Of a stretch of 64,000 bases of DNA, positions 18,609 to 42,496 are shown piece after piece (the stretch's first letter is position 1; every line of letters begins with the position of its first letter). The translations under genes were made by a program, and so were the position numbers. A model generated the notes under the pieces. The model made no database searches. It was not told the DNA's origin and saw only the letters and a program-made list of their open reading frames with translations. The stretch is taken from the NCBI RefSeq assembly GCF_964194025.1, contig NC_134472.1:51584001-51648000 (forward strand), read 5' to 3'. This stretch comes from Convolutriloba macropyga. Lineage: Eukaryota.

Positions 18609-18635
18609 AACATTGTTCTTAAATCTGCTGCTTAC

Positions 18636-21296
18636 TTGTAAAAGTCGGTCATTTTTAGATCGTTTCGAATTCTGTCCCAGCCATTGCGGAAATGCAACAA
18701 ACGGTCCCATACCACCTTGACACAATTCTCCCGGAATCACACAGGTATACATTCCCACTTTAGGCAAGAGAGACCAATTATTTGTCGATCGGATTATTTT
18801 GGAAGTCAAGTCACCGTATGTCAATGAATCCGCTGACTTCGAAATCGCAGCTAATGTAGATTTGTTATTACCTCGACTCATGGTAGTTTGCAAATAATTT
18901 TCCTGCATAAATAATGGCATCATACTATAGTCATAGAAGAAAAGATCGAGCTTGTTTCCTATAGTCATTTTTCTCCGCTCTTCGCCAAAACAGAAAGCAG
19001 CGCGACAGGCATCGAATGGACCCATTTTCTGATCTTTCTTAGCAGCGGTTGCCTTTTCCTTTGCTACGTCATAAGTTAAAGGTTTTTGCATACAGAACCA
19101 AGCCTGCAAATGGTGTATAACCTGACGGACATCTTGGTTAGCACCTATGATCATTTGTTCCAAAGCGTTGGGATTGATTTTAAGGCCCTCTTTAAAGCAC
19201 ATGGACATCATTGCACTTTTCAACTGCTCAACTCTTGGTCTCTGGAACCTTAAGTCAAGACAGTGGTTTGCGAGACTCCGGACTTTTTGGTGTTGTCTGT
19301 CGTTGCATATACATATTACAGGTATTTTGGACTTCTTGATTAATCCAATTAGCTCACCCATTCCACCTCTGTCTTCATTGCCAGCCATTCCATCAACCTC
19401 GTCCATTATTAAGACGTGCTTCAATTCTGCCTCTTTTGACGTTGTGACGTCACTAGAAGATTCTTTTGATGTCATCAAGGATGTCAAAGTCCCTGACTTC
19501 AAAGTTTCTGCTACAACATTATTGAGCAGTTTTTGAGATCGCGTATCACTAGCATTCATGCTTATCATTTCAAAGCCCAACTCCTTGCAAACGATAGTTG
19601 CAGTTGTAGTTTTGCCGATACCCGCAACTCCAGAAAGTAGTGCGGCACGATAAATTAACCCGTTCTCTTTGTTACCAGGCACACCTCGGTACGATTTATG
19701 GGTAAACACTGCATGCCAATTTTGTAACCAGTACAAGAGTTTCTTGGCATTGCTTTTGTCACCCTGCTGACCAATAATTTGCTTTATTGATTTAGCTTGG
19801 TATTTGTCAACCCAGAGCAGAGAGTCTTGTGGGTCGTGATTAGACTTCATGTCTCTAGGTGCATTTAAGTTCGTATTGCTCGCCTTGCGTTCATCGACAG
19901 AATTGGACTTAAGCACTGGTGTTTGAGATTTCTTGGTCTCTAATTTCGCGTTTTTGTTGACTATATCGAGCACAGCAGAGTTATTTGAATTTGAAATAGC
20001 AGTACACTCTAATTTTGTGGCCTGCTTTTCAGGGTTAACTTTTGCTGCCTTGCTTTCTGGTGAAGTCTCATCTTTAATAGAAGAGCTTTTATCGGGAATT
20101 CTCTTCTTACCTGTTTCATATGATTTCGAGTTTTCTATCGTACTTTTCAATTTAGCATCAACATCTCGCTCATCTTCATTTTTCAACTCTTCACCTTTAC
20201 CTTTAGTATGTCTTGACACAAGTTCCAATAATTGATCTTCGTCTATTTTTTCAGTTCCGCATTTTTCAGCTTTCGAAACCTTTGATTCCCCTGGCTCTCT
20301 TCCAACAACGATATAGGATGTCTTCGAACTGACAGTAGTAACAACTTTACCTCCGTGCCGTTCAATGAAAGATTTTACGTCGTCGCGTTCAAAACTTTCC
20401 ATAATCCCAGTAAGAACAAAAGACTTCCCAGATAAGCAATCATCCGGGCCGCGTGGAAATTTCTTTGCTCCCAAACTTTGAGGTCCAGCTCTATTTTGAT
20501 AGGACCAATAAGCCGAACGATTACTCGTCAGCTTTTTATCCGATAAGTTTGTTTCTTCATTTTTCACAGAAGTCGAGGCTTGCGGAGTAGGTGTTTTCTC
20601 GGCCGCCAGTGTTTTCGATTTATCTTCAGCTTTCTCATTTTTCTTGGGTGTTGCCGTCGATGAACTATTTTTACTCGAGTTACTCACAGTTGGCGGAGAT
20701 TTATTCTCGCCAACTTTTTCAACTGCGGCTCCAGCATTATTTTTGGATCTTTTTGCTGCAATTTGGTCCACTTGTGCTTCTTCGTATTTCAATGAGAGCA
20801 AAGGATCGTTGTCCAATTGAGCAAGAGCTTCCTTAAACTTAGGGTTGCTGTGCACCTCAGCATCAGGAGGTAGGCTATTACTTTTCACAGGACTCACTTT
20901 TTTCTTCGGTGGAGATGTAGCTTTCTCAACATCCTTGCTCGCTTCTGTATCGTTAGAACTCGGCGCCGCAGCTTTCTTGCTTGTTTTTGATGACTTTCTA
21001 AATTCATCTATCGGTTTACTAGCTTGCTGTACTGTTGCCGAACCGAAGAAATCATCCGCGGTTGTCAGCTTGATAGTTTTTGGAGGTGGGTTTTTTGACT
21101 TTGTCTCGGCTGCCTTCGCCTCATGATGCTGCTTCTTAGACACTGGATTGCTATCATCTTCATTTTCATCATCTGAATCCAGCATGATGACTCGTTTCAT
21201 TTTCTTTGATTTAGATTTGGAGGATCCTGCCTCTTCATTGCTGGTGGAGGCTTTCGGCTTGCCGAAAAAATCTCGAATATCTTCTAATCTCTGCAT
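18636..21296 (-). CDS. RFC1: Replication factor C subunit 1, large first coding exon (887 codons: N-terminal DIRxFF motif, BRCT, AAA+)
   Basis: EDIRDFFG; BRCT (LSGKSFVLTG...GGKVVTTVSSKTSYIVVG); LWVDKY; Walker A GVAGIGKT; NASD; Walker B MDEVDGM. Donor CAA|gtaagc at 18635. Spliced protein ~1074 aa. Confidence 0.95.
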
Positions 21297-23094: not shown

Positions 23095-24249
23095 TGTTGA
23101 TATCATTTTACGTCAACTAGATGATGCGCCTTCACTTTGGCCGGTTCCTTGGGTATTTGGTCTTAAGACCTTTAGAGGAAACAATTCCAAGCCATAAAAA
23201 TAAGAGCATCGGTGCGAAGACCATCTGGGGTCCAGCTCTTTGAGGACATGAATCCCGTGGGCCTCAAGTCTCCTTGAAACCATCTTTATGGACATAGCAG
23301 AGAAGATGTTCTCTGAACAAAACATGTAGTGCAGTCATTCTTTATCATTTTAGCTCTGCGATCACAGTGGCAACACTACTCTATGATGTAATTTTCTGTA
23401 GCTATCACAACACCTATCTTGTCTAGATCTTACACAATTTTTCGTACTAGAAGACTTTCAATTCAGATACTAAACTTGCGCAAGGACAACAAACACAGTT
23501 TTCTCCGACACCACTCATCAACTTTCAGAAAACGCAGTGTAGCAATTATCACAGCTTCCTCACATCTGTACAATACTAATTCTGTATTCGTTGCCTACTT
23601 GCAAAGACGTTCAGGTTGATTAGAGTTCACAAGATTTCAATTTGAGTCTTTCCAAATCACTTCTACTTAAACAAACTTCATCTACTAGTCTTGATTTCAC
23701 TTTCTTTACTTTGTTAACTTTTGAGCCAGTTAAGACATTCTCGAGCTTATTGGAGACATTTTCAACCAGGTAGAAATCAGCGAGACATGAAGGCGAGAGC
23801 CACTTTTATAACAGGGTCAGACCAACAACCACTTTTACTCCATTCGTTCAAGGGCGTTAATTAGAGGCTCTGACTGGACTCTTTCATCTCAGGCTCTCGC
23901 CTGCACTAATGAGTGTCGGACTGGCAAGGAATTCCAAACGAATTTCGTTGAGTCCGAGGTGGCTTATTCAGTGCACACTCCTCAGATTATCCGCTTAGCT
24001 AACAACCGCTAACTGCGTTGTTAGCAGTTACCCAGGGGCACCACGTGGAGGTTGTGGATCACGTCTATGCTCTGGATTACTAACCTTCCTCCGAAGGTTT
24101 TCGTCTCAGCAATGCGCTTCCACGTTTCCCAGATAATCTTTATGCCACGAAAGAAATTGCGATTTAAGATCGTGAAAATTTGTGTTGACTACAACCAAAC
24201 TGAATTGTCAATCAATTGCATTACTCTGCTGTGGATTCAGAGTTCAAGA
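23095..24249 (-). mobile_element. Possible solo LTR
   Basis: GC-richer ~1.15 kb block bounded by tgttga ... ttcaaga (near TG..CA), TATAAAA on the minus strand at ~23805-23811, imperfect 4 bp flanks aaat/taat. Confidence 0.35.
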
Positions 24250-25799
24250 TAATCAGATCATGAGAAAGTGCTTCAAAATAAATTTTTTCCGATTTTTGGG
24301 ATTTAGTTCTATACGAATTCTGGACTGCATTTATTTTCACTCATATAATGTTTTCGAAATAACTGTTTCAAAATAACAAATAAAACAATTTAGAGGACTT
24401 CCCATTCCCCAAAAACTCGTCCCCGACAGTTATGTCGTATATTATAGTCATGATTTAAGGAAAGGAATGCCCTGAAAATATCTTTCATGTATTTCTATAT
24501 TTTCGTGTGTTTGGAACTCCAAATGTTTGTTTTCTTTCTTTTGGGAAAGGAAATAACTCGTGAAGAGCTTAAAATTGTACCTAATTTTGTAAAATTCGTC
24601 AGAAACTGAGACAGCTTGCCGTCTATATTCCCTAAATAAATCGAGTGCTGAAATCAATGGTATTTCATTAAATTTTACACTGTAAGTACCCAAAATACTA
24701 AAAAGCTTCAGACAGCAAGAACTGCAAAAGAAAAAGTTTGCAGTAATTATGAAACTCAAGGAAAAATATCAAAAGCAAATGCTCCATCTCTAGTTGAATA
24801 CAATTATCGCAAGAACGAGTGCAACTGAATTCGTCAATCTGAAAACCTGTTCTAGTCAAAAATACCAGCAACTAACTATTGATTTTGATAAAAACACAAC
24901 GCTTGATGTATGCTTATAGCAGATGGACGAATCTTGTAAATTTTTTGATATTTTTGTCACCTTTTCATATTTGCAAGAGCAAACCACAAGAGCTCCCCAA
25001 TATTTTTACGCACTCTTGGCTAAGCATCTTAATCAGCTTTTGATAAAAGTGAATGTGTAGCAATATTTATTATCTGATTTTTAAAAACAAAATTGAAGCG
25101 TATTTGAGATTGTGGTTTATCGTTTTGCATAAACAGTAGCCGATCAACAAAAAACAGGGGCTAAAATTTGAGTTCCCGAAACTCTGAAAATTTGAAGAAG
25201 ATAAATAAACGATCAACATGGGATGAATTACTCTCAAACGACCAGTGGGGTAGGGAAGAAGTCTTTTTTCTTTAGTGGTAAGTCATGTGTAACCAAAAAT
25301 TCAACAATACGAATGAACAGAACAGGACAAAAACTGAATTACAATGCAAAAACTTGAATGATCCAATGACCTGAAAATTTTCATTTTTACAGCAACATCA
25401 AGTTAAGAGAGTGAACAAAGCCCATGACCCTATTTGCGCAAAAATGAACAAAAATCTAAAAGCAATTAAAATCTTTCTCTTTCCATGATCTAGTGTTTTA
25501 AGAGTCAACAATTTTGACCATACCTGAACATAACAACATCAAAACTGACACAACGCGTCCTTAGAATGAGCACACAATACAATAACCTTGTGCGAATCAA
25601 CAGAACACTATATTGGAAAAAAAGAGAGTCAGTGGCGCCCAAAAAAGAAAACCATATTAACTCCCCATTAGCTCCCTATGAGACTTGTCCTTAATAAGAT
25701 CATACAATAACAAAAACAAAAATATAACACTATCAAACTCAAAAACTCACAAACTCAAGCGTCAAAGTCATGAAAACTCGATCCAAAAACTAAATTCAT

Positions 25800-27960
25800 T
25801 TCTAACCAATGAGATTTGTAAATAAAAATACTAAGTGATAAAACAGAAATAGAAATGAGGGCAAAAATCGAAAAATTCAATATTTTTTGAAAACAAATAG
25901 TGTCAAAGTCATAAAACGCATTAGCTAACCGTTGGGAAATTCAAACACGTGCAGAGAGGCGCAATTAGAACACCTGTGTATCACGAAAACAGTTGTCGAA
26001 TCGAAAAAAAAACTTTCAAAAACCAAAAATTTGTTCAAACATCTATTTCGCAGTCCACTTTCAAGGTAGCTTGAAAAAAACACGCTTTAAACTTACTCGC
26101 TTTCTCGGTTCCTTCACAACTCCAGCATGACTAAAACTACTAATCTAATTTGACTTCTCATTGGCGTGAAAATGCAGAAAGTATGAAATGCTCTTGAAAA
26201 AAAAAAACAAGACAGCGCACCAATAGAATCCAAATGCTTCGGATTGTAAAAAAACTCTCTCAAATTAGAGTTAAAAATTACGTCGTTCATTAAAATAACG
26301 TCACACGCAGTTCATTAAAAATGCATGAATGAAAGAACAAAAACAGAGTTGAATTGATCGTGACGTCATATGGTCGAAGCAAAATCTTGACAAAATAAAA
26401 AACAGCGAATTCCAGGAGCGAGTAGGAGAATCGCATCTTTCCAAACAAAGCCATACATGCAGCTAAATCGACTATCCGAAGCAATTAATTGCTGCCCACT
26501 AGTTAAATAAAATCTTAAGCAAAACATTAAACCCCTGACGAAATGAAAAAAAATCAGAGTTGACATAACTTAAGCAAGCAAACAAAAACAATTTTGAGAT
26601 CATTCAGAAACCATTAAAAAAGCCGTAGAAATTCGATTCTTCAAACCAAATATTACCAAATAAATCGCAGAGTGAAATCTTGAAACCCTAAAATTTGTAT
26701 TATTAGAAACATATCTGGTCAAGTTGAAATATAGTCGAAATTTTTAAGATGAACAAAACCTGATAAGAAAACTGAGCGGACTAATTGTCACGAAATAACC
26801 CGTCTAACCAATTAAGAACTCTTCAATTAAAACTGCGACCCAAAACGACATATTGTTAAAGCATCAAGAAGATTAAAGAAACTGAATTGAATTGTAATGA
26901 AAACCCGAAAAAAATAATTAGGTCTCAGGGAAACAATAAAAATCTTTGTTTTGGCGTCAGAGCATTGCAAGGAATTTAAGACCTACTTCACTCTCGTCGG
27001 CGACATCTCCGTTAACATGATTTCGAACGTATGTAAAAAAAATCAGTCTTTTTAGTTAAACTTATGAGGCAAATAGATTGTATAAAACTAACAAATTCTA
27101 AGATTTGCCTCGTCTTAAACGAAATCTACATCAAACAATAGAAAAAAATAAAAGGAAAAAGGCTGAAATCTTTGCAATTTTCAAAAACAAAAAAAATGGA
27201 CAATCACCAAAAATGGATTAGTGTATAAAAATTTTTCCAAATAAAGAAAAACAGGAATTTATTTCATGAATTATCAATGGAACGTTACCAATTACATAGA
27301 TCACAGAAATTTCCACTCCAAGATCCCAAACAAAAAAATTTAGAAAAAATTTAACTAAAAATTGAGAAATATGACCGATTTTGCACTTGAAACGCAATAT
27401 GCTCGCAACATTCAAAATTTCAAAAAAGATTGTCAAAACGCCAAAAATAATTTAATTAGTAATAGAACGAAACTAAAGTCCCTGACGCTGCACATAAAAA
27501 CTTTCTAGTAATGAAGACCGAAATACAAAAAGGAAAAATTTTTCAAAAGCCGCGGGTGGATTATTAAGTGTACAATTTTACAAAGCAAAAATACCATAGG
27601 TTAAAAAGGTATGTTGCCATAAACACTGATTTTGCGGGAAAAAAATCAGGTCGAAGATCCAAACGAAGAAAGTAATACAAAGCCATAACTTAACAAAATT
27701 TGGCACTTGAAACGCAATATTGGGCTCTTAAAATATTGTGTTATCAATTGTGTAATGAAAAACAAAATTTCAAGCAACAAATTCGGTTATTCACTCCATG
27801 AAGTTGGATTTGTTGCTCGCTTACAGATTAAAACTAGAAAACCATAGAGCCTCTTCGAGTCGTAAAAACCTCAAGGAAGCAAATACTCCTCTTCGAGTCA
27901 TAAAACCCAAGAGAAACCTTCGAGTCATAAAAAACAAAAAATAGCCCCAGCATACAACTT
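25800..27960. repeat. Mosaic interspersed repeat sharing modules with HINE family C
   Basis: 26020-26160 matches 17565-17705; 26280-26400 matches 17285-17395; cctcttcgagtc(g/a)taaaa-like motif three times at 27850-27930, related to 18468-18485. Confidence 0.55.
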
Positions 27961-28865
27961 TCATCGCTACAAAAGAGAAAGTGCAAATACAGTTAGTTTA
28001 ACAAGCCAAACGCAGAATGATTTAAAAATCGTATGAAAAACTGATTATTACTCTTATTATGCCAAATTAACTTTCTTTGCGCAAATATAGATTGACTGCA
28101 ATAAAGTAAGTTTTGAAGGGTAAATTTAGGTTAAACCAAACACAAAACTCAACCAATAGCAATATTGAAACCAAGCCAAGTTTAGTTTCGCCAACCGTAA
28201 TAACTTTTTTACCGGGTATAAAATTTGAACTTCAAATCTGTTCTACGGTCTTCATTCATTAAGGTATCATTAGCTAATTCAACTCATTTTTGATTCGCAG
28301 ACGAATCTTTCTGTTCTTCGCAGTCAAACACGGATTGCATCTCGGGCAAACCATGCAAACTGTCGCTGCTCATTACGGTAGAAATCGTATCATCACCTTC
28401 GATTATTGATTCTTTCGCATATACAAAACTACCGAATATGTCAATTGAAATCAAGTTCGACCTGTACGAGCTTTAGCAACAACTTTGAACTATATTTCTC
28501 TCGCTGCTAGTACCTTTCAAGACGTTTTTAAGGTGCACCTTTGCAAAAAAAGTTTCCAAACAAATGTGGGCTAATATTGACGCATCGCCAACGCTATTTC
28601 GAACGGAGTGCGAAGAGAGCGAGCTCAACTAATTTTCATGTTATTTTCAATTCATCAAAAGGTAGCTGCATGAAAACGAAGATACGCACAGGTCGTAAAT
28701 TAGGTTAAGAATAGGAATTTCAAAATAAATGCATCAAGTATAAACTAAACCTTAGTTGCCGTTAAAGGCAAAAAATTAAACTTTGAGAATCATCATCGAT
28801 TTGATTGTACTGAAAAATGAAACTGTGCTGAAGTACAAATTGAGCGTGCATCAGTTTGACAGTGG

Positions 28866-29012
28866 TTAGAACTGCACTTTATCCACTCTGAGACACGTGA
28901 TGTTGCAGTACAGCAGGTTGCTCCCTGCCTTCTCTCGCACATCCACGTCTACAATCTGGAATAGGAATTGACTCTCCAGGTCACTATGTCTCATCTGCGA
29001 CATCGGCTCAAC
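28866..29012 (-). CDS. Last exon of an unrecognised small spliced gene (VEPMSQMRHSDLESQFLFQIVDVDVREKAGSNLLYCNITCLRVDKVQF*)
   Basis: GC-rich island; ctaac branch-like site and gacag| acceptor at 29013; 48 codons plus TAA; phase 0 joins the upstream exon. Confidence 0.65.
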   Translation of the reverse strand, partial: VEPMSQMRHSDLESQFLFQIVDVDVREKAGSNLLYCNITCLRVDKVQF

Positions 29013-29142
29013 CTGTCACACAACTACTTTTCTCACGTTAGCCATTTTGCATAAATCCCGCTGGAAATTTCTGCATGTTGAAATTTTGTAGGCAATTTTT
29101 AACTGCGCATCATAAAAGGAGTCACTAAAAACTGCTTTTTTA

Positions 29143-29215
29143 TTGCTCCGACCCACAAAGGGTGAGAGGAACAATATGCTCAACTGCTTTCATTGTTCAG
29201 TCAATTTCGGCTGAT
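29143..29215 (+). mobile_element. Terminal fragment of HINE family A (intronic)
   Basis: ttgctccgaccc-acaaa-gggtgagaggaacaatatgctcaactg...gttcagtcaatt matches the reverse complement of 39724-39791. Confidence 0.7.
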
Positions 29216-29532
29216 AAGTTATCAAGCCTTTGTTTTTTTTAAAAAAAAATACAAGCTCAATATCAAGAGATGTATTTATACCCTAGCTTTCTGAATAAGT
29301 ATATTGATGAGCCTTATTAAAGATGTAATGCGGATTTTTTGAACTGACAGTTGCTTCCTATTTTGTCAGTCCAAATAAAATTTGGTACAAAAAATTAAGC
29401 CTGAAAACCTATCACCATTACCTGATAATTTTTTGCAGCAGCAAAACGTCACCTCGGCACAAAATCAAAAAGGTTGCCTCACAACAATATGTATCTATTA
29501 TTACCATTGGGAATGATAACATTGAAGCAAAC

Positions 29533-29664
29533 CTGAAAGACAGTCCTCCAGCCTCTCTGTTTGAACCCCCTGACAACTGGGTAGTTGAGAGTGGTAAGGT
29601 GGTTGTCCAGATGGTACAGCTTAGAACACAGGTGCTTGTCCTCCACACGAAGCAGAGCCTTCAC
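29533..29664 (-). CDS. Internal exon of the unrecognised spliced gene (VKALLRVEDKHLCSKLYHLDNHLTTLNYPVVRGFKQRGWRTVFQ)
   Basis: gtag| acceptor and CAG|gtttgc donor; 132 nt phase 0-0, stop-free, GC-rich relative to flanks. Confidence 0.65.
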
Positions 29665-30399
29665 CTACGCATTCTCAATGTTGGAAAGCACTGAAATGCT
29701 TTTTTGTCTCGATCTATTTGCATTTGTCACGACTTAATTCAGCACTTTATCGCAATATAACCACTACTATAGTTGACGATGGGAGAAAAATTACCTGGCC
29801 GATTGTTATCAATAATACAACACAATAATTCTACCCTTCTGAACAATGCGACCGCAAACACAACTGAGAAATGATGCTTGTTACATGCAATGAGGGCGAC
29901 CGATAAAAGTTTATAATCAGCGTTTCAAACTTATAATGATTAATCAATTTTTTTTTCGATGTGTCAACAGCATTTCTTAGTACTCGTGGCTTTCCTTGTT
30001 TAAAAAGCCAGAGGTGCAATTATAACATTTCCAATGAAAGGCGAACGCACAAAAAAGGTTTTCAGAATCGTTACTTCAGATTTGTTAATTTATCAGATCA
30101 GTCAAGTATGAAAACGATAAAAACTTAACTGAAACTACGATTTTTAAATGCAGGTTTTCTTGACCATATCTTTAATAGCATCACTTGGCCACAAAAAGAT
30201 GCTAAAATTTTAAAGGGTAGAAACCTCCAGAACGTAAACGACCCAGAAAGCATTACTTTCTTAGCTGAGTTGATAATAATAATTAATAAAATAATTCCTC
30301 GCTAGTCAATTACTGCGAAGCTCAAAATCTTGGGCAACCACTAGCTTGTAGAGAGCTTCCAAGCAAAATTGTACACAAGAAATTCTTTCAACTCGCTTT

Positions 30400-32855
30400 C
30401 TCTGATGAAAAATATGAGCTAGTCGAATCGAACCCAGTGATACGTGGCCTGAAAACGTCATTGTTCGGAGCTATTTTCTAAACCAGGCGCCGACGTGGTT
30501 TAAGTAATTATTAGCTTAACCGAGATCATCAGACGACCGACTAAAGACTATTCGTGGGTGTTTATAAAATGCTCGTTTGTTGAATAACAAATATGAAGAT
30601 GCATCTTCGTTTCTTATATCAAATAATTTCTTGATCGAGGTAAACGGAACATGGCTTTCAGAAGCAACTAATTACAAGCTCAATTAGATCGCTGGAGAAA
30701 CAATGTTTATCATTCCAACCGAGAACCTTCCCGTGGTGGCGGACCATCATCGTTTGTAAAGGAAAGCTGTAAAATGAATTTTGGCGGAGAAGGAGTTTAC
30801 AGAAAACTGGTAATATCTCATTGATGAAGCGTATTTCTACAAATCAATTTTCTGGTTATTGTAATCTATCGTGTTCCTGTTTGATATATATTTCAGTGCT
30901 TTCCAAAGTTTCTGATAAGTTATCGCACGTGTTGTCGGTTCATCATCCTAAGTATACAAAATGTCGGTTAATTAGTGATTTCAATGTTCCAATTAATCTG
31001 AATTCTCCCGCCGTTTCGAGTCTGCTTTCACTCTTTAACGAGCTTAACTCAGTAAATTTTGTTACTACTCCGACAATCACAAGTGGCAACATATTAGATT
31101 TAATTGTTTTTGATATTCATGGAGAGGTGGAGGTAAAAGTTCAAACCAGCACTTCTGATCATCATTTTGTATTCTTTCAATTTAATATAGATAAGAGTAA
31201 GTCCGAAAAAGTCGAGTAATTTGATTACAATGGGAAAAACGTTGACCTATTTGTTTTTGCAGATCACCTTTTTCCCAGATTTACTACTCGATCATAATTG
31301 TCCTCCTTGTTTGTCGAACCAATGTTTGTGGGATTTTCATGATTCTTTAGATGATACCCGCAAATGCTTGGCAAACTATGGAAAGCGTCTAAGCTACTAA
31401 AACAAAAAAATTGACGCAGATTTTGAATGAATCCATGTACCGAAAATGTTAATTGTCCAAAGTAAAGTTTGAGAGCTGTAGTTCCCTATTATGACATGTT
31501 ACATCAAAAACGTTCCAATTACCTCACAAATCGACTCAACAATGACAATTCACGAAATCGGTTTATGACATTTGATCAAATATTCAAGCTGAGAAGAAAT
31601 TGCCAGAGTCCAGTTATTATCACCACGTCAACTTGCTAGCAATATTAACACTTTCTTTGGACAAAATTGATAAAGTGCGTGCGTCTATCATCTCGCATTT
31701 GGATTTTATTCTCTCTGATAGAGTTGCCACAAGTTGGAAAAGTTGCCACAAGGGACAAAAGTGAAGATATATAACGTAACGTGTTGTTACTGAAATTTCA
31801 AGTTCTACATCTAACGATTTCAAATATTTTGCAACCAAGTATTCATCTCTCTGCTCTGGTCTAGTAAACTGGATCCTTCTGTCAGGCGTGTTTCCGGATG
31901 AATTGAAGCATGGTGTATCGAACCAGTTACCTGTTCGCGAATTTATTACAGAGTTGTGGGAAAAAATAGTGCTATTACAGCTAAAAGGGTATTTATCGAG
32001 AAGTTCAACGTGACTTACCAACAAATCAGTCTAGAGATAACATCATTCCACTGAAACATCACTCAATTGTTGCGTCCGAGAGCTTCACAAAAATTTGATT
32101 CAAAAGAAAACTACCTTGCTTGTGAGTCTTGATTTGGTCAGTGCTTTTGACACGGTTGACTTTGATATTTTACTAGCTATTTTCGAGAAGGAATACGATT
32201 TTTAAAAAACTGATTTAAAGAATTTACACGAACGCAAATTACACGTGAAAATCAAACATTCGATATCTATGGAATTACGTGCGCAGTCTTGAGTGCCTCG
32301 AGGCACTATATTGGGGCCGTTTTATTCTTGTTATATATCAAAACAGTTGGACCTTCTTGGTGAAATTAAAGTTCTACATAATCATTTTAACACTGATAAC
32401 CTCAATTCATTTTAATTTCAAAGAGCATTATTCAGAGAGCAGTATTTCTTCAGTGTTAAAAGATTTGAACTCTTGAAATTGAAGTGACGAAAAGATACAA
32501 TGCCTTACAAGAACAGGAACCTTACACTACAAGAACCCCTTTCCGACAGATATTATGATTCTTTTGTAACAGATTAAAATCAGCACGTGTGTAAAATTAC
32601 TTGGTTTCTATTTGGACGAGATGATTTTTGAAAAACAAATAAACAGTTCAAAATGCACAAATGAGACTACAAAGCGTTCTTTCGCTGACCAGGAAGCCAA
32701 GAGTTGGAATGCACTACCCGAGTATTTGAGAGTTGAGGTATTCCATGATAGTTTTTAAATGAAGCTGAAAATTCTTCTATTCTGCCAATCATTCTGATTA
32801 TTTCTCCGCCTTAACAGTTTTGAGGAAAGACTGGTCAAACAAATCATCATCATCA
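30400..32855 (+). mobile_element. Decayed L2-like LINE (APE endonuclease + RT) inside the intron of the unrecognised gene
   Basis: NAR..NK, TWL, RGGG, SDFN, TSGNILDLI, SDH (APE); LDLVSAFDTVD at ~32128; VPRGTILGP; 3' WNALP; (cat)n tail at ~32845; many stops and frameshifts. Confidence 0.8.
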
Positions 32856-33630
32856 AATTGATCGTTGCAAAATATTTTTTATTACTTTTAGCAACAGTAT
32901 AATGGCTCTGATTGTTTGATTTTACTACGATAGTAGTATTGCAGAACCTGTTCTATTCACATATTAACATCACTATTCACATTATATGGGAGCGTGAACA
33001 ACTGCAGTGGACTATAATACTGTAAACAAACAGAAAAATTGGACACGCTCTTTTTAATTCAGATTTAAAAATTTATATTTCTCATCTGTCAGTTTCAATC
33101 TTTACTAATATCAGCCACTTAATGCAAAACAGCGCCTATTTGCCTCATAAACCAGAGCAGATACCGTTTTTAAGCCTTGGCCCTAGCAATATATCAAACA
33201 ATATTTTAATGAAAAGATGTTGGCGAAACCTGAGCGAAGCACAATTTAACGCTCATTATTTTTGCAAAACAGTCTTGCAAAACAGAAAACTCTGAAAATG
33301 GAGTGGTGCCCGTGCGCAGTGAAGCGCCATAGGTTGTGAGAGGCAAAAAATAACACCTGAAAAATTAACACCGGATTTCTATTTCTTTCTACCGTCGTTG
33401 GTTTTTAATAAACGTTTTGAAAATAACGTTGGTTTTTAATAAATTATCGTTATCTTCTATCCTACAAAAGGAAAACAAGAAGTCAAACAAGAAATCTCGC
33501 AATATTTTCAGAAAGTTCAACAATTCGTACTTTACAGAGAACAAAACTTTCCAAAGCGTTTAGATGCCACCTTCTAATACAACAAATTCTAAAAAAACAG
33601 TGTTTTCGAAGATCAAAAGGAAAAGATTAC

Positions 33631-33659
33631 CTGGTCGAATTCTGGTACCAGTCGGTGGC
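33631..33659 (-). CDS. 29 nt exon of the unrecognised spliced gene ((G)HRLVPEFDQ)
   Basis: Strong splice sites tttttcag| and CAG|gtaatc; phase 1-0, compatible with neighbouring exons. Confidence 0.55.
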
Positions 33660-33755
33660 CTGAAAAACGAGCTACAAAAGGTGTGCCCATAATAAGCAAG
33701 AAAGATGCACATATGTCCTCCTTGAGATGAGTTAAGACTTTACCATTAATCATAC

Positions 33756-33774
33756 CATGCTCACACTCAGCCAT
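33756..33774 (-). CDS. Candidate first coding exon of the unrecognised gene (MAECEH-G)
   Basis: ATG GCT GAG TGT GAG CAT G|gtatga; a 96 nt GT-AG intron joins it in phase 1 to the 29 nt exon. Start assignment is tentative. Confidence 0.4.
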
Positions 33775-35616
33775 AGTAAAGTCAATACAATGCATAAATA
33801 TTTCATAAAATTGCAAAAATGTTGTCCAATTAATACAGAATTTGATACAACAAAAACTAATTATAGAGCAAAAACAACAATTCAAAAGGAATAATTTGAA
33901 TAAATGTTCGAAAACGTCAGAACTCAACCGCTATTTATTCTCAAAATAGGGAAAATGAAGCTATCAGAGAGGCAATGGTTAGTGGCATAGATGTCAATTG
34001 AATGGCGAAGAATGGCAAAAAGCAATAAAGAGCCAATTAGTAAAACAGGAAGCTAGATTGAGCTCAATGTTTTACCCAACTATAATCGGCAATAAATCAA
34101 AGAATATTACCCCAGGAACTAAATGTGAAACTATTAATAGCTTCTACTAATAGAAGCGTCCAGGTAATAACCAATGGCTGCTCAGTAAAAAAATTCTTCT
34201 ATGTAGCTCAGAATAATAATCGGCTTAAGCTGACAGAACGCGAAGGGATGCGAAAATGACGTCGAAAAGGGGATACTGAGATAAAATCTCAACAAGAGCA
34301 CGTTAAAAGCCCACAGGCATCCATTTACGCATATTCAAATGTTTTCAAATATCCAATTATTGTCGTAGGTTGCTACAGTTCGAATCGAAGCAATTTCTAT
34401 CATCCCACTGAGTGTTGATTTCAATGGCAAACCGTCAATTAAGCTGCACTGCCTTCATAATTTTCAAATTGCTAGACTCTAATTACAAAATTGAGAACAC
34501 CAACGCGCTTGCAGAGATGCACACACGCTGACCCTAATGCCCTGCCTATTAAAAAAAAACGAGCCGATGTAGGATTAGAAATATTGGAAAATTATTGGAT
34601 CAAATCATGTGTAAAAAGTATTCTTGAAAGGAGAAACAGCGTTAAGTTAATGTTTACAAAATCAGGAAATGAGAATGAGCGAATAAGGGTGTAAATTAAC
34701 GAGTAAAAACAAGACTTCATTAGCAAGGAAAACATATCCAGGAGATGGGTAAACTGACTCCTTGTCAAGGAGAGGCAAAAGGTAAACTTAATTACACAAG
34801 TGACAGATTGGTGTCTCTCTGCTCCGATACCATCCTTTCCTAATCACGGAAATTATTTCTCAAGACGCTCAAACAGCCCAGAGCAATAGCTACAGTATCA
34901 CACATTGCAGTAACAGCCACAAGTTAAAACAACAATATCACTCAAAAAACTTAATCGCTTAAGGCTGATGTACACCTACTACAGAATTGCAATCAGGCCA
35001 CACAAACAAAACAATTCGATAAACCGAGAAACATTAAGCTGCGATGAAAGCTTAATGTGTTGACATGATACATGTAATGCCGATACTAAAATCCCGACTC
35101 TTACTTTTTAAAAGGCATTGTTGAGCTCCGCAGTTATCAGCAAGGATTATGAATGTGCGATAGAACGTTGCATGAAAGTTCGGAGCTACTCAGATTTTCG
35201 GCTTATGGTTGACTCTTGTGACGGATAGAAGGCTTGAAAACAATGGTGCTGTCCCGTTTAAGATCTGAATACTCAAATTAGTTGCGAATTATGTTTTCAT
35301 TGTTGATATAAGTGCTTTGAGCTCCAGCCCAGCTGGTATAATTATTTATATCTATGGGGTTTGATTTATACAAGCGCTAACAGCTATAATTTTTCATATA
35401 TTATAACCAAGAGTTCCGGAGATGTGATTTGGTAACGTTTTTCACCCATAAACATCCAATTCCAAAAAAGTTTTCAATGTTTTTTCTTTAGTGTTAATCG
35501 ACTACTTTTACCTTTTGATTGAAAATTTCAGTAGCTAGAGAACTGTTTGTTAAAAAATCACTGACTCCAAAATAGAGGTTCTATAAAGATAATTTTGAAA
35601 AAGCACCTAAATATAA

Positions 35617-35999
35617 CTTCACTTTCTAATGTGTATTGCAAGGAGAGAATTATGTTGGTGTTGTATAATGTTTGATGCCAACAACGCAATATTGGACATT
35701 AAATGCAGCGTCAATCATCAATTTTCACGGTTTATTTTCTCCCAATTTTGTTAATGGTAACAATGTCAAAAATTATGGTAATAGTACCAACGGTGAAAAT
35801 ATCTTACCATTTTCTCTCCTTGCAATACACATTAGAAAGTGAAGATATTTTCACCGTTGGTACTATTACCATAATTTTTGACATTGTTACCATTAACAAA
35901 ATTGGGAGAAAATAAACCGTGAAAATTGATGATTGCCGCTGCATTTAATGTCCAATATTGCGTTGTTGGCATCAAACATTACAACGCCAACATAATTCT
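35617..35999. repeat. Long inverted repeat (~160 bp arms) whose loop holds an inverted copy of the left flank
   Basis: 35646-35805 vs 35842-35999 differ by 2 substitutions and one 2 bp indel; 35812-35844 is the exact reverse complement of 35617-35649. Confidence 0.95.
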
Positions 36000-36785
36000 T
36001 AACTGTTCCTAATTTTAAACATAAAAGAGTTACCAAGTTAAGCAAAAAAATATTTACACTTTACACGGTTTGACAGTAAATACCTTAGTTTGCATTCAGT
36101 CGATGTCAAGTCTGCTAAAAATGGATTTTTTTATTTGACGATTTTACTCAAAGATTGTAAAAATGGAAAAATAAACCATTTCCGAGATTGTATGTTTATT
36201 GTGAGATTGTGACGCATATGCAGTAAAAAAAAGTTGATAAAGAGAAATGATGATGGCGGACTCAGCAACTAGTTGAAGAAAAAACAATAATCTACAAATA
36301 TCTGAATAAATAAGCTGTCAAGAATGCGAAACCGTTGTTTCTTCCAGAAAATAGCACAAATAAGCAATTAATCAACAGGTTTTATGATCAATAATAAAGG
36401 ATGCTTAATTTACAAAAAGGGGCAGTTCCCGATAAAAACATTTAAGGCACCATGGACAGTTTTGTCAAGTACTCTTTTATCAGTTCTGAGCAGATAGGGT
36501 TTTTTAAATCTTTAGATTTCGTTTTCTCTTCAGTACTGTAAAGAATCACTCGGCACATCCTGAAAAGGGTGAAACAATTTCAAAATGTTCTGATGCAAAT
36601 CAATTGAATGATTGAGCCCATAATCAACAAACTATGACAAATGTACCGTACGTCACAGCCGAGCAGAAAAAAAATCCGAAAATATTTTGTCAAAAATTCA
36701 AAAAAATTTTTGATTCCATTAAGTAGGAGCAAAACATTCAATCAAAATTTTTTCATCAACAGTAAAACGACATTAATGGCAAAAA

Positions 36786-39700
36786 GAAACAAGGCGGCTC
36801 GGTAATGTGCGATCGCACATAAGGTTCCGACCCCGCTCATCCACAATTTTGGCCTAATTGTCTACCAAATGAGGAACAGATAGAAAAACACAAAAGTATT
36901 TTTCAAAAAAAGAACTGGTGTATGAACGAAAAGATAGACTACAAAGCAAAAAACTCAGTGGAGTAAAAAATGATGCATTAGATTGATGAGATATGCCAAT
37001 TTTAAGAAAGCGATCGAAGACGAACGGCAAAATCAAACAACAACAACAAACATTAATTACATCAAAAAAATTATGTCCGTTTTAAAAAACAAAACTTAAT
37101 AACAAAGTCAAAATAGCGTTTGATAAAACTGAAAATAAACAAAATAACTTGTAATTCACCAGAAAAAAATGGTTGTTCGCCAGTTCATAATGAAGCTCGG
37201 TAACAATTAGACAAAAAAGAACAGAAAGTTTAAAGTTAGAAAATTTGCTGAATTTTTTTTTTTAAATTAATTTCAAAGTAATGAAAACCATTCGGAATCA
37301 ACTAAAATATCCCATAGGTTTACAGTTACCAATGCTTCCTTAGAAGGGAATTAAGAACTCTTGGTATTCAATTTTTTATGCAGCTATAAAAAGAACAACA
37401 AATAGACAACAAACTAAAAATCAAATAAAACTTGCCATAAAATGCTTTGGAAGCCGTAAAGCCATACTTTGGCCCCCAAAAAATGTTCGATTGCACCTTC
37501 GTCAAACACCGATACTGTATTATCTGGCCGCTCAATAATGAAAATAAGCAATAATTAGACAAAAAAATGCAAAATTATGTAATACTTGTTTTCTTTCGAA
37601 AGAAAATTATTTCCAAAAACATGAAAGCCATAAATTACAAAATGAAAAAGTTGAGTAGGTTCGACCATTCTTCCATAGGAAACCCTTGAAACCTGCAATT
37701 ATCCTGAATACGTCTTGCGCCTACAAAAAGAACGTCAAAAATGACAAAAATCAAAAATTCATTTACTTTTTTTTTGTGAAAAACCCTTGTGGAAGCCAGT
37801 AAAATCATAACGAATTCTCTTAAAACATTAGATTTTGTGACGCCAATCCCTTTTGACACCTTCCCTTGAAATGTATTATGTGACTTCTCATTAATGAAAC
37901 TAGTTAACAATTAGACCAAAAAAAAGCAAGATTATGTAAAACTTGTTTTTATCGAATTTTTTTTTTTCCAAACACATGAAAGCCATTAATTACAAAATGA
38001 AAAAGTTGAATAGGTTCGTTTATTCTTCCAAAGGAAGCCCCCGAGAACTGCAATTAACCAGAACACGTCTTACATCTACAAAAAGAACGTCAAAATGACA
38101 AAAATCAAAAATTAGTTTACTTTTTTTTGTGAAAAGCGCGTGTCGAAGCCAGTAAATTCATAACGAATTTTTTTTAAAAACGTTAGATTTTGTGACACCA
38201 ATCCCTTTTGACACATTCCCCTGACAAAATTAATGTCACCTTTAACCTTTAATTAACGAGACCAGGTAACAAACAGACAATAAAATGAACAAAATTGCGA
38301 AGTTGAAATGTTTTTTTTTTCACTTTGGAAAACAATTGTTTTCGAAGTCATGAAAGCCATTATCTATCTTCTAATATCAGAACGTCTGCTCATCTACTCT
38401 TCCAGGAAAAGCCAACCAAACCAGGTCATTTTACAGGAACTTAAATGCGACTAAAAAGACAAAGTAAAAACGACAGTTAAAGACAAAATTAAAAAATTCA
38501 ATTAAATTCTTCGAGAAAGTATTGTCGAAGCGGCAAAGAACCACAATCTATATCTTTAAGGATTTCAATATTATCAATTGTGCGTTATTTTGAACGCGAA
38601 AAATGTGATATACGAGCTGACAATAACGTGATAATTTGACAAAATTAGAAAACAAGAAAAATGGGCAAATACCTAAATTTTTTTAAAAAATTTGTGAAAT
38701 CTAGTAGTATCCAAGCCAGAACACCATAACTTAAGGCGTAAAACCGCAATAAATACTAAATTTGAATTCAGCAGAAAGAAGGAGCGCTCTTTGATTGCCG
38801 ACACTAAGCTACAAGTTGACCAAAGTAAGAGAAAAATGGAGGCAAAATTCAATAAGCCATTTTTTATTTAAAAATCAAATATTTTAAGTCAAAACGACCA
38901 TCAGCTTTCAATCACCTAGATAAATTAATTTTGAGCAATTTGGGAAGCCAATAGGACATATCACTAGTGAGCTTTGATTGAAATGTTCTGTTATTTGATT
39001 AATATAAAAAAGATCGTATTTTTTTTTAAAAAACCGACTGATGACAATCCGAATTATTTTTGGATTGTAACGGTCCAAGATTGGTACAGAACTAGTCCTG
39101 CTAATGTTGATTGTCCATTAGGAATATTTAATTTTTGGAATGTCATTGATAGAGATATTTTGTTCGTTAAAAAGTCAAAAGTAAATGCTGCGTTTTTGAT
39201 AATCAACGAAAAAAGTTAGCAAAAAACGGCAAAGTTTTTTTTACAGAGCACTCCCAACGGAAGTTGAAGTGGATTTAGCCACCATTTCAGTCTAAAAAGA
39301 TTGTGTTAGTGGTTTTGGAAGTGCACTGCCTGCAAATTTAATCAGAGTGGACTAAAGAAACTTATTTCGTGCTGTTTTTGATGAAAGAGTCTGAATTTTG
39401 TGAAATTTTTAGCCGGAATTTGTGACAAAAAATTCAATGAAAATAGCCGACAATGTATTTTGTCTTTAAACGTAAAATCAACAACATTTTCATGAAAAAT
39501 TTTATTAAATTTTAACAAAATTGGCGACATTTTAGTCAAAAATTCCGAAAAAAGGTGAATGAAATCAACGGAATTCACTCTATTTTCTCAAAAGTTTAAA
39601 CCTCGATATCTCCCTGTCAAAAACGAAAATCAAAAACATCTTTTTAATTCCATATTCTACGCTGGACAAGCTTTCTAATGATACCAGTCTCAACTCTCTA

Positions 39701-39794
39701 CGATGAATATATCGATCGGACAGAATTGACTGAACAAAAAAAACCCAGTTGAGTATATAGTTCCTCCACCCCTCAAGAGGGGTCGGAACAAAAA
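36786..39794 (-). mobile_element. HINE-like element family A, ~3 kb, with internal ~355 bp tandem repeats
   Basis: 16 bp palindrome atgtgcgatcgcacat 36805-36820; subTIR gttccgacccc 36824-36834 / ggggtcggaac 39779-39789; terminal hairpin acccctc-aa-gaggggt; A-runs at both ends; internal unit anchors at 37205, 37553, 37909, 38271. Confidence 0.75.
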
Positions 39795-40841
39795 TTCCCT
39801 GTGGAGCATCAAAATTGATTAGAAAAAATTCAAAGCAAACTTTTCAGTCTCAAAAAATAACTTATATGAAATGAATGTCACGTCACATCTTTCTTTGAGG
39901 GACCTGAGTTGAACAAAGTTACAAAACGGTTGTTTTGAAATTCTCGATTTCTTTTGTGAAACCCTCAACGGTCAAAACTATTGACTAATTTCTTTACATT
40001 GTTCCTTGGTTCTAAAACGTAATTCAAAAGACCCGTTTGGACGGTAAATACAAGTATGAACCCTTGTTTAAAAATGTTTAATTTTTTTAATTCTGTTTAA
40101 TTTATTGAAGTTCATAATTACAGCTTTCTGTTGGAACACCAAGCAGAGCAAAATTATTGATTTAAGGACCTGGTGTCCTTATTCTCTACAATTTCAACAA
40201 ATCAAATTGGCCCGAAAAACTGAAACAACAGAAATGTTTCAGAATGAGAGCAAATTGGAAGAAAGATTTCAAACCATTACGAGTAAGCCCTAACAATCGT
40301 AACTATTCAGCCCTAAGTGAACGTCAGAGAGCTGAATCATGCCATAAATAGGAGCAAAATACATAAGAAAACAAACAGAAAAACAGCGCATTGAATGAGA
40401 AGTTAGCAAAAATCCGGTAGAACTGCAATTTCAGATCTATCTGCTAAATTGTGGAGAACTAAACTACTTTTGCTTTAGATCAAAAGAAATTTGTCAGCAG
40501 TCTAAGGCAAATTTTTGGACAGAAACCGACGAAGTGAGTGAAAGGGGCAATTAAGATTATTTTTAAACGAAAGAGCAGAATACTAAAAATCCAGTAGTAC
40601 TAATTTCAGATCCCAGATCAATGTTTACTCTAGTAGAATAGTAGCTCTTTATCTTCAGTAAGGCTATATTGCAACTTATTTCGGGAAGCGTACTTGACAA
40701 AAATAGACAAAATCAGATAACAATGACAGAATTGAGGCGAGTTTTGTGCAAGCACTAAATAATAAAAAAATCACTTTTCGCACAAAAGTCCGGTCGATTG
40801 ATTCATCGACGATAAGATGCCCGAAAAGAGCTAAAAATGAA

Positions 40842-41307
40842 AACATCGGCAGTCTAAAGATCAGCAGTCTAAAAAAACAGTAAAACAGACAGACCAAATA
40901 AATTTGGTCTTTTCATTGAAGGCTGATCTGTTATATTTTGATTAAAAATCTGTATTAAGTTATTGCTGCCTCTATTAGCTGACCTCAAATAACCTTCATT
41001 TAGAGTGACACACACCCATTTGACCTTATCTCTTTGAATTAAATTTAAAAAAGTCTATTTCAAATTGAGAAGTCATTTTTGAGAGAGGTAAGTCAAGTTT
41101 GACCAAAAATTTAAAAACGCGTATGAACAAAAAAACTCGCTCCACTAAGAGCGAAAAATGACGTCACACATGCAATTCAGTTGAAATTGCATGAACGAAT
41201 GAACAAAAAGTGGCTGTTACGTCATTTGGTCGTAACAAAAATCAACGACGAAATAAAAAAAACAAGAGAAGGCCAATAATAGCCCCAGCTATCGCTGTGC
41301 GGCTATT
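40842..41307 (-). mobile_element. Internally deleted HINE family C copy inserted in an A-run without TSD
   Basis: Absent from the paralogous unit (empty site gctaaaaattaaaatgactaaac at ~43058-43080); ends aaacatcggc ... aatagcc..tgcggctatt as in 16940-18608. Confidence 0.75.
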
Positions 41308-41704
41308 AATGACTAAACTAATAGCAGTTGAAGATAACTTCAATTATCACAATTTAGAGAATGAATTTTATTACTTAACTTTATGCAAAAATCTTGTCAA
41401 AAACAGACAAAGGGAGCGAAAAGGGCATTAAAACCACTTCAGAAAACAACAAAAGCAGAACAATCAAAATAGCCAGCAAAACTAAACAGAATGTTATTGT
41501 AGATGGTAGAATTCCAGATAGCTTTTTATTTTCTAGGTTATAACGAAGCCTACTTCACAAAATCAGCCAAGAAGGGCTAATTTTAAGCCATTTTTGATCA
41601 GAAGCAAACTAATTTTTTTTTAAAACTTCTAATCAAATTGGCCCATAAAACTGAAATAAAGAAATGTTTCAGAATGATAGTGAATTGGAAGAAAATTCTC
41701 TAAC

Positions 41705-42496
41705 TGTACAGAAGTGTGCTACACTCAGGAACACTGTTTGATAAGCGGTGCTAAATTGAGAATTTAGGTCATAGTGCGTGAAGCAAAAACTTGATTTGGA
41801 AAAAAAACCAATTTAACATGCGAACAAATTGCTTAGTAGATTTGAGTAAACTACAATTTTAAGATCACTAACTCAAACTAAAAATACTATGACGTGACTT
41901 ATCACACCACTATGACAACACCAACTCAATCTTGATAATTCTGTCGACACTTATCTCTATCTAATAAGATACTAGAGATAAGCGTGTCCGCAAATATAAA
42001 AGGAGCTTGCACGCTCAACTACCAACACTTCTTGGTCCCCGATAGGTTCAGAATTAAATGATACGACCGTATTGCTCCCTTGCTTAAATTGCATCTTACT
42101 AGAGATATATTTTAACTTTGTGACTAGTTCTTAACTAAAAACTCTCTAAGTCAGAAAATATTAACTTTTGGAAATAAGGTAAGTTCAACATACCTTCTTT
42201 AAGTTATATGTTAACATCTCTTAAATTCTATCTAAGCTACAAGTTTAACTTAGAAGAAATCATCCTGTGCTAACCAGTGCTATTTCAATCTTAATAACTT
42301 CACTTTTCTATCTTTCATGCTCGGTTCATAGTTGATGACGTTCAACATAACTTATTAATTCATATTTGCATTTAACTTTCTTTACTACTCAACTATATAC
42401 CAAACGTAGAACTAGGGGGTTGAACTCTCAAGTTATCCAGATGGTCCCGCGATTAACCCCGTCGTTTAAGTATCTAATGTACGGACCAGTAGTATA
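41705..42496 (+). mobile_element. Solo LTR (792 bp) with 4 bp TSD TAAC
   Basis: taac|tgtac ... gtata|taac (TG..CA with a C>T change); TATAAAA at ~41995; absent from the paralogous unit at ~40270. Confidence 0.7.

What the first reader, a model, noticed from the sequence alone, without database searches (positions are those of the whole stretch)
28866..33774. Hidden four-exon gene for an unrecognised ~108 aa protein
Seen: exons 33774-33756, 33659-33631, 29664-29533 and 29012-28866 (-) have GT-AG boundaries and compatible phases (1,0,0) and give a stop-free product: MAECEHGHRLVPEFDQVKALLRVEDKHLCSKLYHLDNHLTTLNYPVVRGFKQRGWRTVFQVEPMSQMRHSDLESQFLFQIVDVDVREKAGSNLLYCNITCLRVDKVQF. The exons are GC-rich islands, and transposon remnants fall only in the predicted introns. 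The composition looks globular and I do not recognise the family. The first exon is the least certain part.
Basis: partly seen in the sequence, partly recalled or inferred. Interest (0 to 1): 0.7.

Follow-up and report, generated by a model that had tools for sequence, protein, structure and literature searches.

The report
Probable orphan small-protein gene, acoel worm
Two single-copy segments between the RFC1 and SETD1 genes of an acoel worm look like real protein-coding exons of a small protein with no known relatives. No RNA data could be reached, and the proposed start of the gene is unproven, so this is an ordinary candidate lineage-specific gene.

Summary
The sequence facts hold.

- **Exons 3 and 4 (29664-29533 and 29012-28866, minus strand):** They are well beyond chance. 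Both are sharp GC islands and single copy in the 1.18-Gb genome. Both show the same codon periodicity in the predicted frame, with GC3 of 0.65-0.68. That matches the most biased actin and tubulin genes here. They rank 3rd and 1st of 485 comparable open stretches. The two listed haplotype variants in exon 3 are both synonymous.
- **Exon 2:** It is a distinctive 29-nt GC micro-island with excellent splice sites.
- **Exon 1:** It is not distinguishable from many alternatives.
- **Repeats:** They lie only in the predicted introns.
- **Relatives:** No family was found in exon-by-exon searches of Pfam, PDB sequences, the ESM Atlas, a word search and viral and metagenome contigs. A full phmmer scan of 1.84 billion proteins, run with exon 4 only, also found none. 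Its one hit is a repeat-inflated chance match.
- **Expression:** All four reachable sequencing runs are genomic DNA, so splicing and expression are untested.

My best reading, at about 0.55, is a lineage-restricted small-protein gene whose 5' end is unresolved. Interest is low to moderate.

The parts
28866..29012 (-). Exon 4: the last 48 codons plus the TAA stop.
   Evidence: The translation is confirmed. GC is 0.49, with GC1/2/3 of 0.55/0.27/0.65. It ranks 1st of 485 open stretches by GC3-GC2. It is single copy. The model frame has the best codon score of the six frames. Single-sequence AF2 predicts a long beta-hairpin with pLDDT 93-94 at its centre.
29013..29532 (-). Predicted intron 3, 520 nt (gtttgc...gacag). 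It holds a multicopy ~80-bp repeat at 29137-29216.
   Evidence: GC is 0.34. The repeat has at least 40 copies elsewhere in the genome. A 2-nt insertion at 29025 in one haplotype lies in the intron, not in an exon. CAGGTT occurs at both junctions.
29533..29664 (-). Exon 3: 44 codons, entered and left in phase 0, with no ATG.
   Evidence: The translation is confirmed. GC is 0.52, with GC1/2/3 of 0.57/0.32/0.68. It ranks 3rd of 485. It is single copy. The variants 29560 T>C and 29596 A>C are both third-position and synonymous. AF2 predicts a helix at residues 10-26 followed by a hairpin, with mean pLDDT 72.
29665..33630 (-). Predicted intron 2, 3966 nt (gtaatc...gcgtag), mostly a decayed low-copy repeat at 30207-32855.
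   Evidence: Copies at 67-79% identity lie on other contigs. A confirmed 5.9-kb intron in the neighbouring RFC1 gene shows that introns of this size occur here.
33631..33659 (-). Exon 2: a 29-nt micro-exon. Plausible.
   Evidence: GC is 0.59. It is one of 12 GC micro-islands in 15.7 kb and is bounded exactly by tttttcag|G and CAG|GTAATC. It is one of only two places on this strand with strong sites and an open frame, and the only GC-rich one. The plus-strand control gave none. The 32856-33900 stretch that holds it found no second copy in the genome.
33660..33755 (-). Predicted intron 1, 96 nt. It is in frame and stop-free, so retention would also keep the frame.
   Evidence: The 104-aa ORF at 33613-33927 runs through exon 1, intron 1 and exon 2 in one frame.
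33756..33774 (-). Exon 1: ATG plus 16 nt. Unsupported beyond sequence logic.
   Evidence: The start context is good (A at -3, G at +4) and the donor is ATG|GTATGA. However, 32 alternative phase-1 first exons lie within 1.5 kb, including a second donor ATG|GTAAAG at 33744. An in-frame upstream ATG lies at 33795.

Best explanation
This is a lineage-restricted (orphan) protein-coding gene on the minus strand. It lies in the 24-kb gap between a SETD1-like gene and RFC1 in an acoel worm genome. Its two 3' coding exons (29664-29533 and 29012-28866) are joined by removal of a 520-nt intron. Together they encode about 92 residues of a small, non-secreted protein. Per-exon predictions suggest one helix followed by beta-hairpins. 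Codon usage is as biased as in the most biased actin and tubulin genes of this genome, which I take to mean it is, or recently was, well expressed and under selection. The start codon must come from an upstream exon, because exon 3 has no ATG. Shown: the coding signature, single-copy status, splice-compatible borders and the absence of detectable relatives. Inferred: splicing, expression, the start and any function.
For: - Both exons show the same strong codon periodicity in the predicted frame, with GC3 of 0.68 and 0.65 and GC2 of 0.32 and 0.27.
- They rank 3rd and 1st of 485 open stretches outside known genes. Only 0.09% of 44-codon windows reach this level.
- Their GC3 matches the best actin (0.65) and alpha-tubulins (up to 0.64) of the same genome. 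The neighbouring genes RFC1, SETD1 and MOB have 0.38-0.42.
- The model frame has the best codon score of all six frames in both exons.
- GC falls to 0.34-0.37 exactly at the proposed splice sites.
- Exons 3 and 4 are single copy by DNA and by protein, and the stretch holding exons 1-2 found no second copy. Repeats lie only in the introns.
- The two listed haplotype variants in exon 3 are both synonymous, against a synonymous fraction of 0.23 expected by chance.
- No listed indel falls in an exon.
- The neighbouring genes are on the same strand, and one has a 5.9-kb intron.
- Exon 2 is a GC micro-island with excellent splice sites.
- The exon peptides fold with fair confidence from single sequences.
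Against: - There is no transcript evidence. All four reachable runs are genomic DNA, with even depth over the introns and no joints at the predicted introns.
- My run search used a 5.8-kb stretch, which can hide a small RNA.
- No relative was found anywhere.
- There is no paralogue or retrocopy in the genome.
- The intron 3 donor is weak (GTTTGC), and both 3' acceptors lack a pyrimidine tract.
- A stronger acceptor (gcatttcag) about 30 nt upstream of exon 3 would introduce an in-frame stop.
- No AATAAA or ATTAAA lies within 1.3 kb after the stop.
- Atlas 'recognition' values are low for both exon peptides.
- The antisense frame shares the periodicity, so the strand call rests on stops, codon scores and splice sites.
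Confidence: 0.55

Rival explanations
1. These are relic exons. They would be the remains of a formerly functional gene, or of an old and now unique insertion of foreign or transposon coding sequence. They still carry a coding signature but are no longer expressed as a protein.
For: No relatives were found, no RNA evidence is available, and the start is unclear. Splice signals around exons 3 and 4 are weak. No poly(A) signal lies nearby. CAGGTT at both ends of intron 3 would also fit a target-site duplication from an insertion into a once-continuous ORF.
Against: A GC3 of 0.65-0.68 with sharp borders should decay in a 33%-GC genome if it were unselected. No stops or frameshifts occur in 92 codons in either haplotype among the listed differences, and both listed variants are synonymous. 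There are no other copies, so it is not a recognisable transposon family. Transposon ORFs measured here have lower GC3, at 0.49-0.52.
Confidence: 0.2
2. The exons belong to a different transcript structure. They could be part of a longer gene, or of a polycistronic, spliced-leader-processed minus-strand transcription unit running SETD1 - candidate - RFC1. The 5' exons, or the start, would then differ from the reader's. In one version only the 45-codon ORF of exon 4 is translated.
For: - Earlier notes of this scan call the genome an acoel with spliced-leader trans-splicing and candidate operons, and 30% of genes are trans-spliced in another acoel (PMC9911081).
- All neighbouring genes are on the minus strand.
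- Non-exonic DNA over most of the window is T-rich on the minus strand, as inside the RFC1 intron.
- Exon 3 has no ATG, and the first ATG after its acceptor lies in exon 4.
- The collection holds only the 45-aa ORF, P0001.
Against: Exon 3 has codon periodicity as strong as exon 4, in the frame that continues into exon 4, so it is most likely translated. The published S. roscoffensis leader ends ...AAATAGA and supplies no ATG. No further exons with this signature were found between 21.3 and 45.3 kb.
Confidence: 0.15
3. This is chance. Two open frames happen to lie in GC-rich patches, and there is no gene.
For: Open frames of 44-49 codons are abundant, with 485 of at least 40 codons outside known genes. 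Short exons with GT-AG borders can always be found. There are no relatives and no RNA evidence.
Against: The joint signal is very unlikely by chance. The 1st- and 3rd-ranked periodicity values lie 520 nt apart, on the same strand, in compatible phase, with GC borders at AG and GT.
Confidence: 0.1

Closest known systems
Taxonomically restricted (orphan) small-protein genes, as annotated in large numbers in acoel genomes. Example: the 34,493 gene models of Symsagittifera roscoffensis, whose authors call their pipeline more inclusive for non-conserved genes (PMC9911081).
   Same: It is a short ORF of about 100 codons with few exons. No relative is detectable outside the lineage and no domain is known. 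It sits between conserved housekeeping genes.
   Different: Transcript support is missing here. Its codon bias is unusually strong for an orphan, equal to the most biased actin and tubulin genes.
Sushi/CCP-like repeat protein P0002 (423 aa, four tandem repeats), the only hit of the 1.84-billion-protein scan.
   Same: A 25-residue stretch of exon 4 shares 13 identities with each repeat.
   Different: The score of 42.6 bits is the sum over four near-identical repeats. One repeat scores about 28 bits in the pairwise BLASTP, which by my estimate is far from significant against a library of that size. The first cysteine of the repeat is absent from the aligned stretch. Exon 3 has no match at all. 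I treat it as a chance match.
Pfam C2_SYDE (PF25336).
   Same: Exon 4 aligns weakly to profile positions 12-52, in a beta-strand-rich stretch.
   Different: The score is E 0.024 and 15.2 bits, against a curated cut-off of 27. Only a third of the domain is covered, and no further C2 sequence lies downstream before the stop.

Membership tests
Protein-coding gene (generic) | An open frame with codon-position bias like that of known genes of the same genome. | tested here: met
   Exons 3 and 4 have GC1/2/3 of 0.57/0.32/0.68 and 0.55/0.27/0.65. They rank 3rd and 1st of 485 open stretches. GC3 equals that of the best actin and tubulins.
Protein-coding gene (generic) | A spliced, polyadenylated transcript. 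| not testable with these tools
   Only four runs were offered and all are genomic DNA.
Protein-coding gene (generic) | Purifying selection or conservation in relatives. | tested here: inconclusive
   Two of two listed exon variants are synonymous, which has p of about 0.05. No sister-species sequence could be reached, and no homologue was found.
Protein-coding gene (generic) | A defined start codon and 5' exon. | tested here: inconclusive
   Exon 2 is distinctive. Exon 1 is one of 32 alternatives.
Transposable-element remnant | Multiple related copies in the genome, by DNA or by protein. | tested here: not met
   Exons 3 and 4 match only themselves, and the best other protein matches have E of 1-8. 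The stretch holding exons 1-2 found no second copy.
C2_SYDE (PF25336) | A score above the Pfam gathering threshold over the domain. | tested here: not met
   15.2 bits against a cut-off of 27, covering 41 of 120 profile positions.
Sushi/CCP-like repeat (as in P0002) | Significant similarity to a single repeat, including its conserved cysteines. | tested here: not met
   13 of 25 identities per repeat. The first cysteine of the repeat is missing from the aligned stretch, and exon 3 is unmatched.
Cystatin/stefin-like fold (recalled from memory for the helix + hairpins and the 'VVRG' motif) | A match to the Pfam cystatin profile or to a solved cystatin. | tested here: not met
   Neither exon gave such a hit in Pfam at E up to 10 or in PDB sequences. 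The joined peptide was not tested.

The most novel reading that the evidence does not exclude
This is a young, acoel- or genus-specific gene, possibly born de novo. It encodes a well-folded small protein of about 100 aa (one helix plus a four-stranded sheet) and has already acquired the codon bias of the most highly expressed genes. That would imply an abundant protein with a lineage-specific role.
Probability: 0.3. Interest if true: 0.4.

Novelty: new member of a known kind. Interest (0 to 1): 0.25.

Why it matters
If real, it adds one unannotated, probably well-expressed lineage-specific protein to an acoel genome. Acoels are used to study early bilaterian evolution, regeneration and photosymbiosis. 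Strong codon bias in a gene with no relatives would make it a good case for studying how new genes become abundant proteins. Orphan genes are found by the thousand in every newly sequenced animal lineage, so the find changes no general picture. The method may be the more useful result. In this AT-rich genome, sharp GC3-rich islands pick out coding exons well even where no homology exists.

Tried and rejected
Searches that found nothing credible:
- **Pfam, both exons, antisense ORFs, read-through ORFs and nearby GC islands:** nothing above noise.
- **PDB sequences:** only GCN4-zipper and designed beta-trefoil noise.
- **ESM Atlas:** no usable hit.
- **Word search:** only the window's own 45-aa ORF for exon 4, and nothing for exon 3.
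- **Full phmmer scan with exon 4:** one repeat-inflated chance hit.
- **Viral and metagenome contig scans:** none. Exon 3 alone is too short for that tool, so its 61-aa open stretch was used instead.
- **Rfam and tRNA scans of the window:** none.

Ideas rejected:
- **Multicopy transposon:** rejected.
- **A spliced leader that donates the ATG to exon 3:** rejected, because the published acoel leader ends AAATAGA.
- **A gene on the plus strand.** A 121-codon antisense open frame covers exon 3. It is judged less likely because the antisense of exon 4 has stops, its codon scores are lower in three of the four comparisons, it has no usable splice sites and it has no Pfam hit.
- **Further exons with the same signature between 21.3 and 45.3 kb:** none found.

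Full report
**Setting.** The window is G000:C5:51584001-51648000 of a 1.18-Gb eukaryotic genome with about 33% GC. Earlier notes of this scan identify it as an acoel worm with spliced-leader trans-splicing. Most of them name Convolutriloba macropyga. I did not verify the species.

The conserved genes in the window all lie on the minus strand:
- RFC1: a large exon at 18636-21296 and a last exon ending at 12126. The 5.9-kb intron between them has the borders CAA|GTAAGC and ttttag|G.
- A SETD1-like gene (RRM + SET) as one 1473-codon open frame at 45338-49759.
- A MOB/phocein gene at 56236-57009.
- A LINE reverse transcriptase, also on the minus strand, at 58003-59310.

The finding lies in the 24-kb gap between SETD1 and RFC1.

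**Check of the observation.**
- Exon 3 (29664-29533) and exon 4 (29012-28866) translate as stated. So do exon 1 and exon 2, with the split codon G|GC.
- All three introns begin with GT and end with AG.
- The four exons add up to 327 nt, which is 108 codons plus TAA.
- The exons have GC 0.49-0.59, against 0.34-0.37 for intron 3 and the flanks.
- Repeats lie only in the introns. An ~80-bp repeat with at least 40 copies sits at 29137-29216. A decayed low-copy element of about 2.65 kb sits at 30207-32855.
- Exons 3 and 4 are single copy by DNA and by six-frame protein search of the whole genome. The unique stretch 32856-33900 holds exons 1-2.

**Is it more than chance?** An open frame alone is worthless here. 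Outside the known genes the window has 485 stop-free stretches of at least 40 codons.

The composition inside the frames is not ordinary.
- GC at codon positions 1/2/3 is 0.57/0.32/0.68 in exon 3 and 0.55/0.27/0.65 in exon 4. This is the same pattern in the predicted frame of both.
- By GC3 minus GC2, exon 4 ranks 1st and exon 3 ranks 3rd of the 485 stretches. The exon 3 stretch is diluted by 17 read-through codons.
- Only 0.09% of non-overlapping 44-codon windows reach 0.36.
- The 1st- and 3rd-ranked stretches lie 520 nt apart, on one strand, in compatible phase, with the GC drop exactly at an AG and a GT. That is not a chance pattern.
- A codon log-odds score puts the model frame first of six in both exons.

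The GC3 level is informative. RFC1, SETD1 and MOB have 0.38-0.42. The best actin of this genome has 0.65, other actins 0.51-0.53, an actin-related protein 0.36 and alpha-tubulins 0.43-0.64. The candidate therefore shares the codon bias of these presumably highly expressed genes. The two transposon ORFs measured have 0.49-0.52.

**Polymorphism.** The four public runs that hold the region are genomic DNA. Depth is even across exons and introns, contigs are colinear with the genome, and there are no joints at the predicted introns. They do show a second haplotype.
- The two listed differences inside exon 3 (29560 T>C and 29596 A>C) are both third-position and synonymous, K>K and L>L. Only 23% of possible changes there are synonymous.
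- No listed indel falls in an exon.
- This is weak support with p of about 0.05, and the list of differences was truncated.

**The 5' part.** Exon 3 has no ATG, and an in-frame TAG lies directly before it. If exon 3 is translated, an upstream exon must bring the start.

It is one of only 12 GC micro-islands of 30 nt in the 15.7 kb upstream. It is bounded exactly by an excellent acceptor (tttttcag|G) and donor (CAG|GTAATC). A scan for short segments with a strong acceptor, a strong donor and an open frame ending in phase 0 found only two places on this strand. It found none on the other strand, and exon 2 is the only GC-rich one.
- *Exon 1.* It has a good start context and donor. However, it is one of 32 ATG..GT phase-1 options within 1.5 kb, and a second good donor lies at 33744. 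Another 218 ATG..GT exons could join exon 3 directly. Intron 1 is 96 nt, in frame and stop-free, so it may not be an intron at all.
- *Points against the exact model.* The intron 3 donor is GTTTGC. Both 3' acceptors lack a pyrimidine tract. A stronger acceptor (gcatttcag) about 30 nt upstream of exon 3 would bring the TAG into the message. No AATAAA or ATTAAA lies within 1.3 kb after the stop. That last absence is not surprising on a T-rich strand.

**What is the protein?** All searches were made exon by exon, by reference. That covers search, fold, exact look-up and a junction pattern.
- Pfam gives nothing for exon 3. For exon 4 it gives only sub-threshold noise: C2_SYDE at E 0.024 and 15.2 bits, against a cut-off of 27.
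- PDB sequences give only noise.
- The ESM Atlas gives no usable hit and low recognition values.
- The word search finds only the window's own 45-aa ORF for exon 4, and nothing for exon 3.
- The full phmmer scan of 1.84 billion representatives with exon 4 returns a single protein, P0002. It has four near-identical sushi-like repeats, and its 42.6 bits are summed over those repeats. One repeat shares 13 of 25 residues and scores about 28 bits in a pairwise BLASTP. By my estimate that is far from significant against a library of this size. The first cysteine of the repeat has no counterpart, and exon 3 does not match. I treat it as chance.
- Viral and metagenome contig scans find nothing.
- There is no paralogue or retrocopy in the genome.
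- Single-sequence AlphaFold runs on the separate exon peptides predict a helix (residues 10-26) plus a short hairpin for exon 3, at mean pLDDT 72. For exon 4 they predict a long hairpin with pLDDT 93-94 at its centre. This is compatible with a small alpha+beta protein but proves nothing.

**Limits of the negative results.**
- The protein collections may hold no transcriptome or annotation of this species or its close relatives.
- The 45-aa self ORF did not appear in the big scan, so short ORFs, or the window's own proteins, seem not to be in that library.
- My single run search used a 5.8-kb stretch, which can hide a small RNA.

**Verdict.** My best reading is a real, lineage-restricted small-protein gene whose two 3' exons are correctly drawn (about 0.55). 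Exon 2 is plausible, and the start is unresolved.

The rivals are:
- A relic that keeps a coding signature (about 0.2).
- A different transcript structure, including spliced-leader or operon-type processing between SETD1 and RFC1 (about 0.15).
- Chance (about 0.1).

The exact four-exon, 108-aa model is right with a probability of perhaps one in three. I know of no described relative, but orphan genes are common in newly sequenced lineages, so the interest is modest.

Noticed in passing
window 35666-35981: A 140-nt inverted repeat, 99% complementary, with a 36-nt loop. It is flanked by a second 40-nt inverted pair (35610-35649 and 35812-35851). It looks like a foldback or MITE-like element.
   Followed up: no
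window 29137-29216: An ~80-bp multicopy repeat inside intron 3, with at least 40 copies at 76-89% identity across the genome. It coincides with a depth bump and loose contig ends in the DNA runs.
   Followed up: partly
window 30207-32855: A decayed low-copy element of about 2.65 kb, with copies on C6, C755, C4 and C2 at 67-79% identity. Its short plus-strand ORFs look LINE-like by eye but give no Pfam hit.
   Followed up: partly
window 13000-18000, 25000-28000, 33000-45000, 50000-52000: Non-exonic DNA is T-rich on the minus strand, with plus-strand AT skew of +0.16 to +0.27. The sign is the same as inside the confirmed RFC1 intron. All host genes in the window are on the minus strand. Continuous minus-strand transcription (operon-like, with the spliced-leader processing noted elsewhere in this genome) is possible but untested.
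   Followed up: no
window 23116-24188: A cluster of GC islands (up to 0.53 GC) lies between the candidate and the RFC1 start codon at 21296. It has several short open frames on both strands and no Pfam hit. It could be the RFC1 promoter or 5' UTR, or another unrecognised feature.
   Followed up: partly
window 28284-28454 (-): A 56-codon acidic ORF lies 410 nt downstream of the candidate's stop. It has a moderate codon score and no Pfam hit. It is probably 3' UTR or chance.
   Followed up: partly
window 45338-49759 (-) and 18408-21296 (-): The SETD1-like gene is a single uninterrupted 1473-codon frame, and RFC1 has a 2.7-kb first coding exon. Conserved genes here have few but long introns.
   Followed up: partly
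window 44504-44559 (-): A GC micro-island holds a tRNA T-arm-like GGTTCGAACC motif, but ARAGORN calls no tRNA in the window. It may be a tRNA-derived SINE fragment.
   Followed up: no
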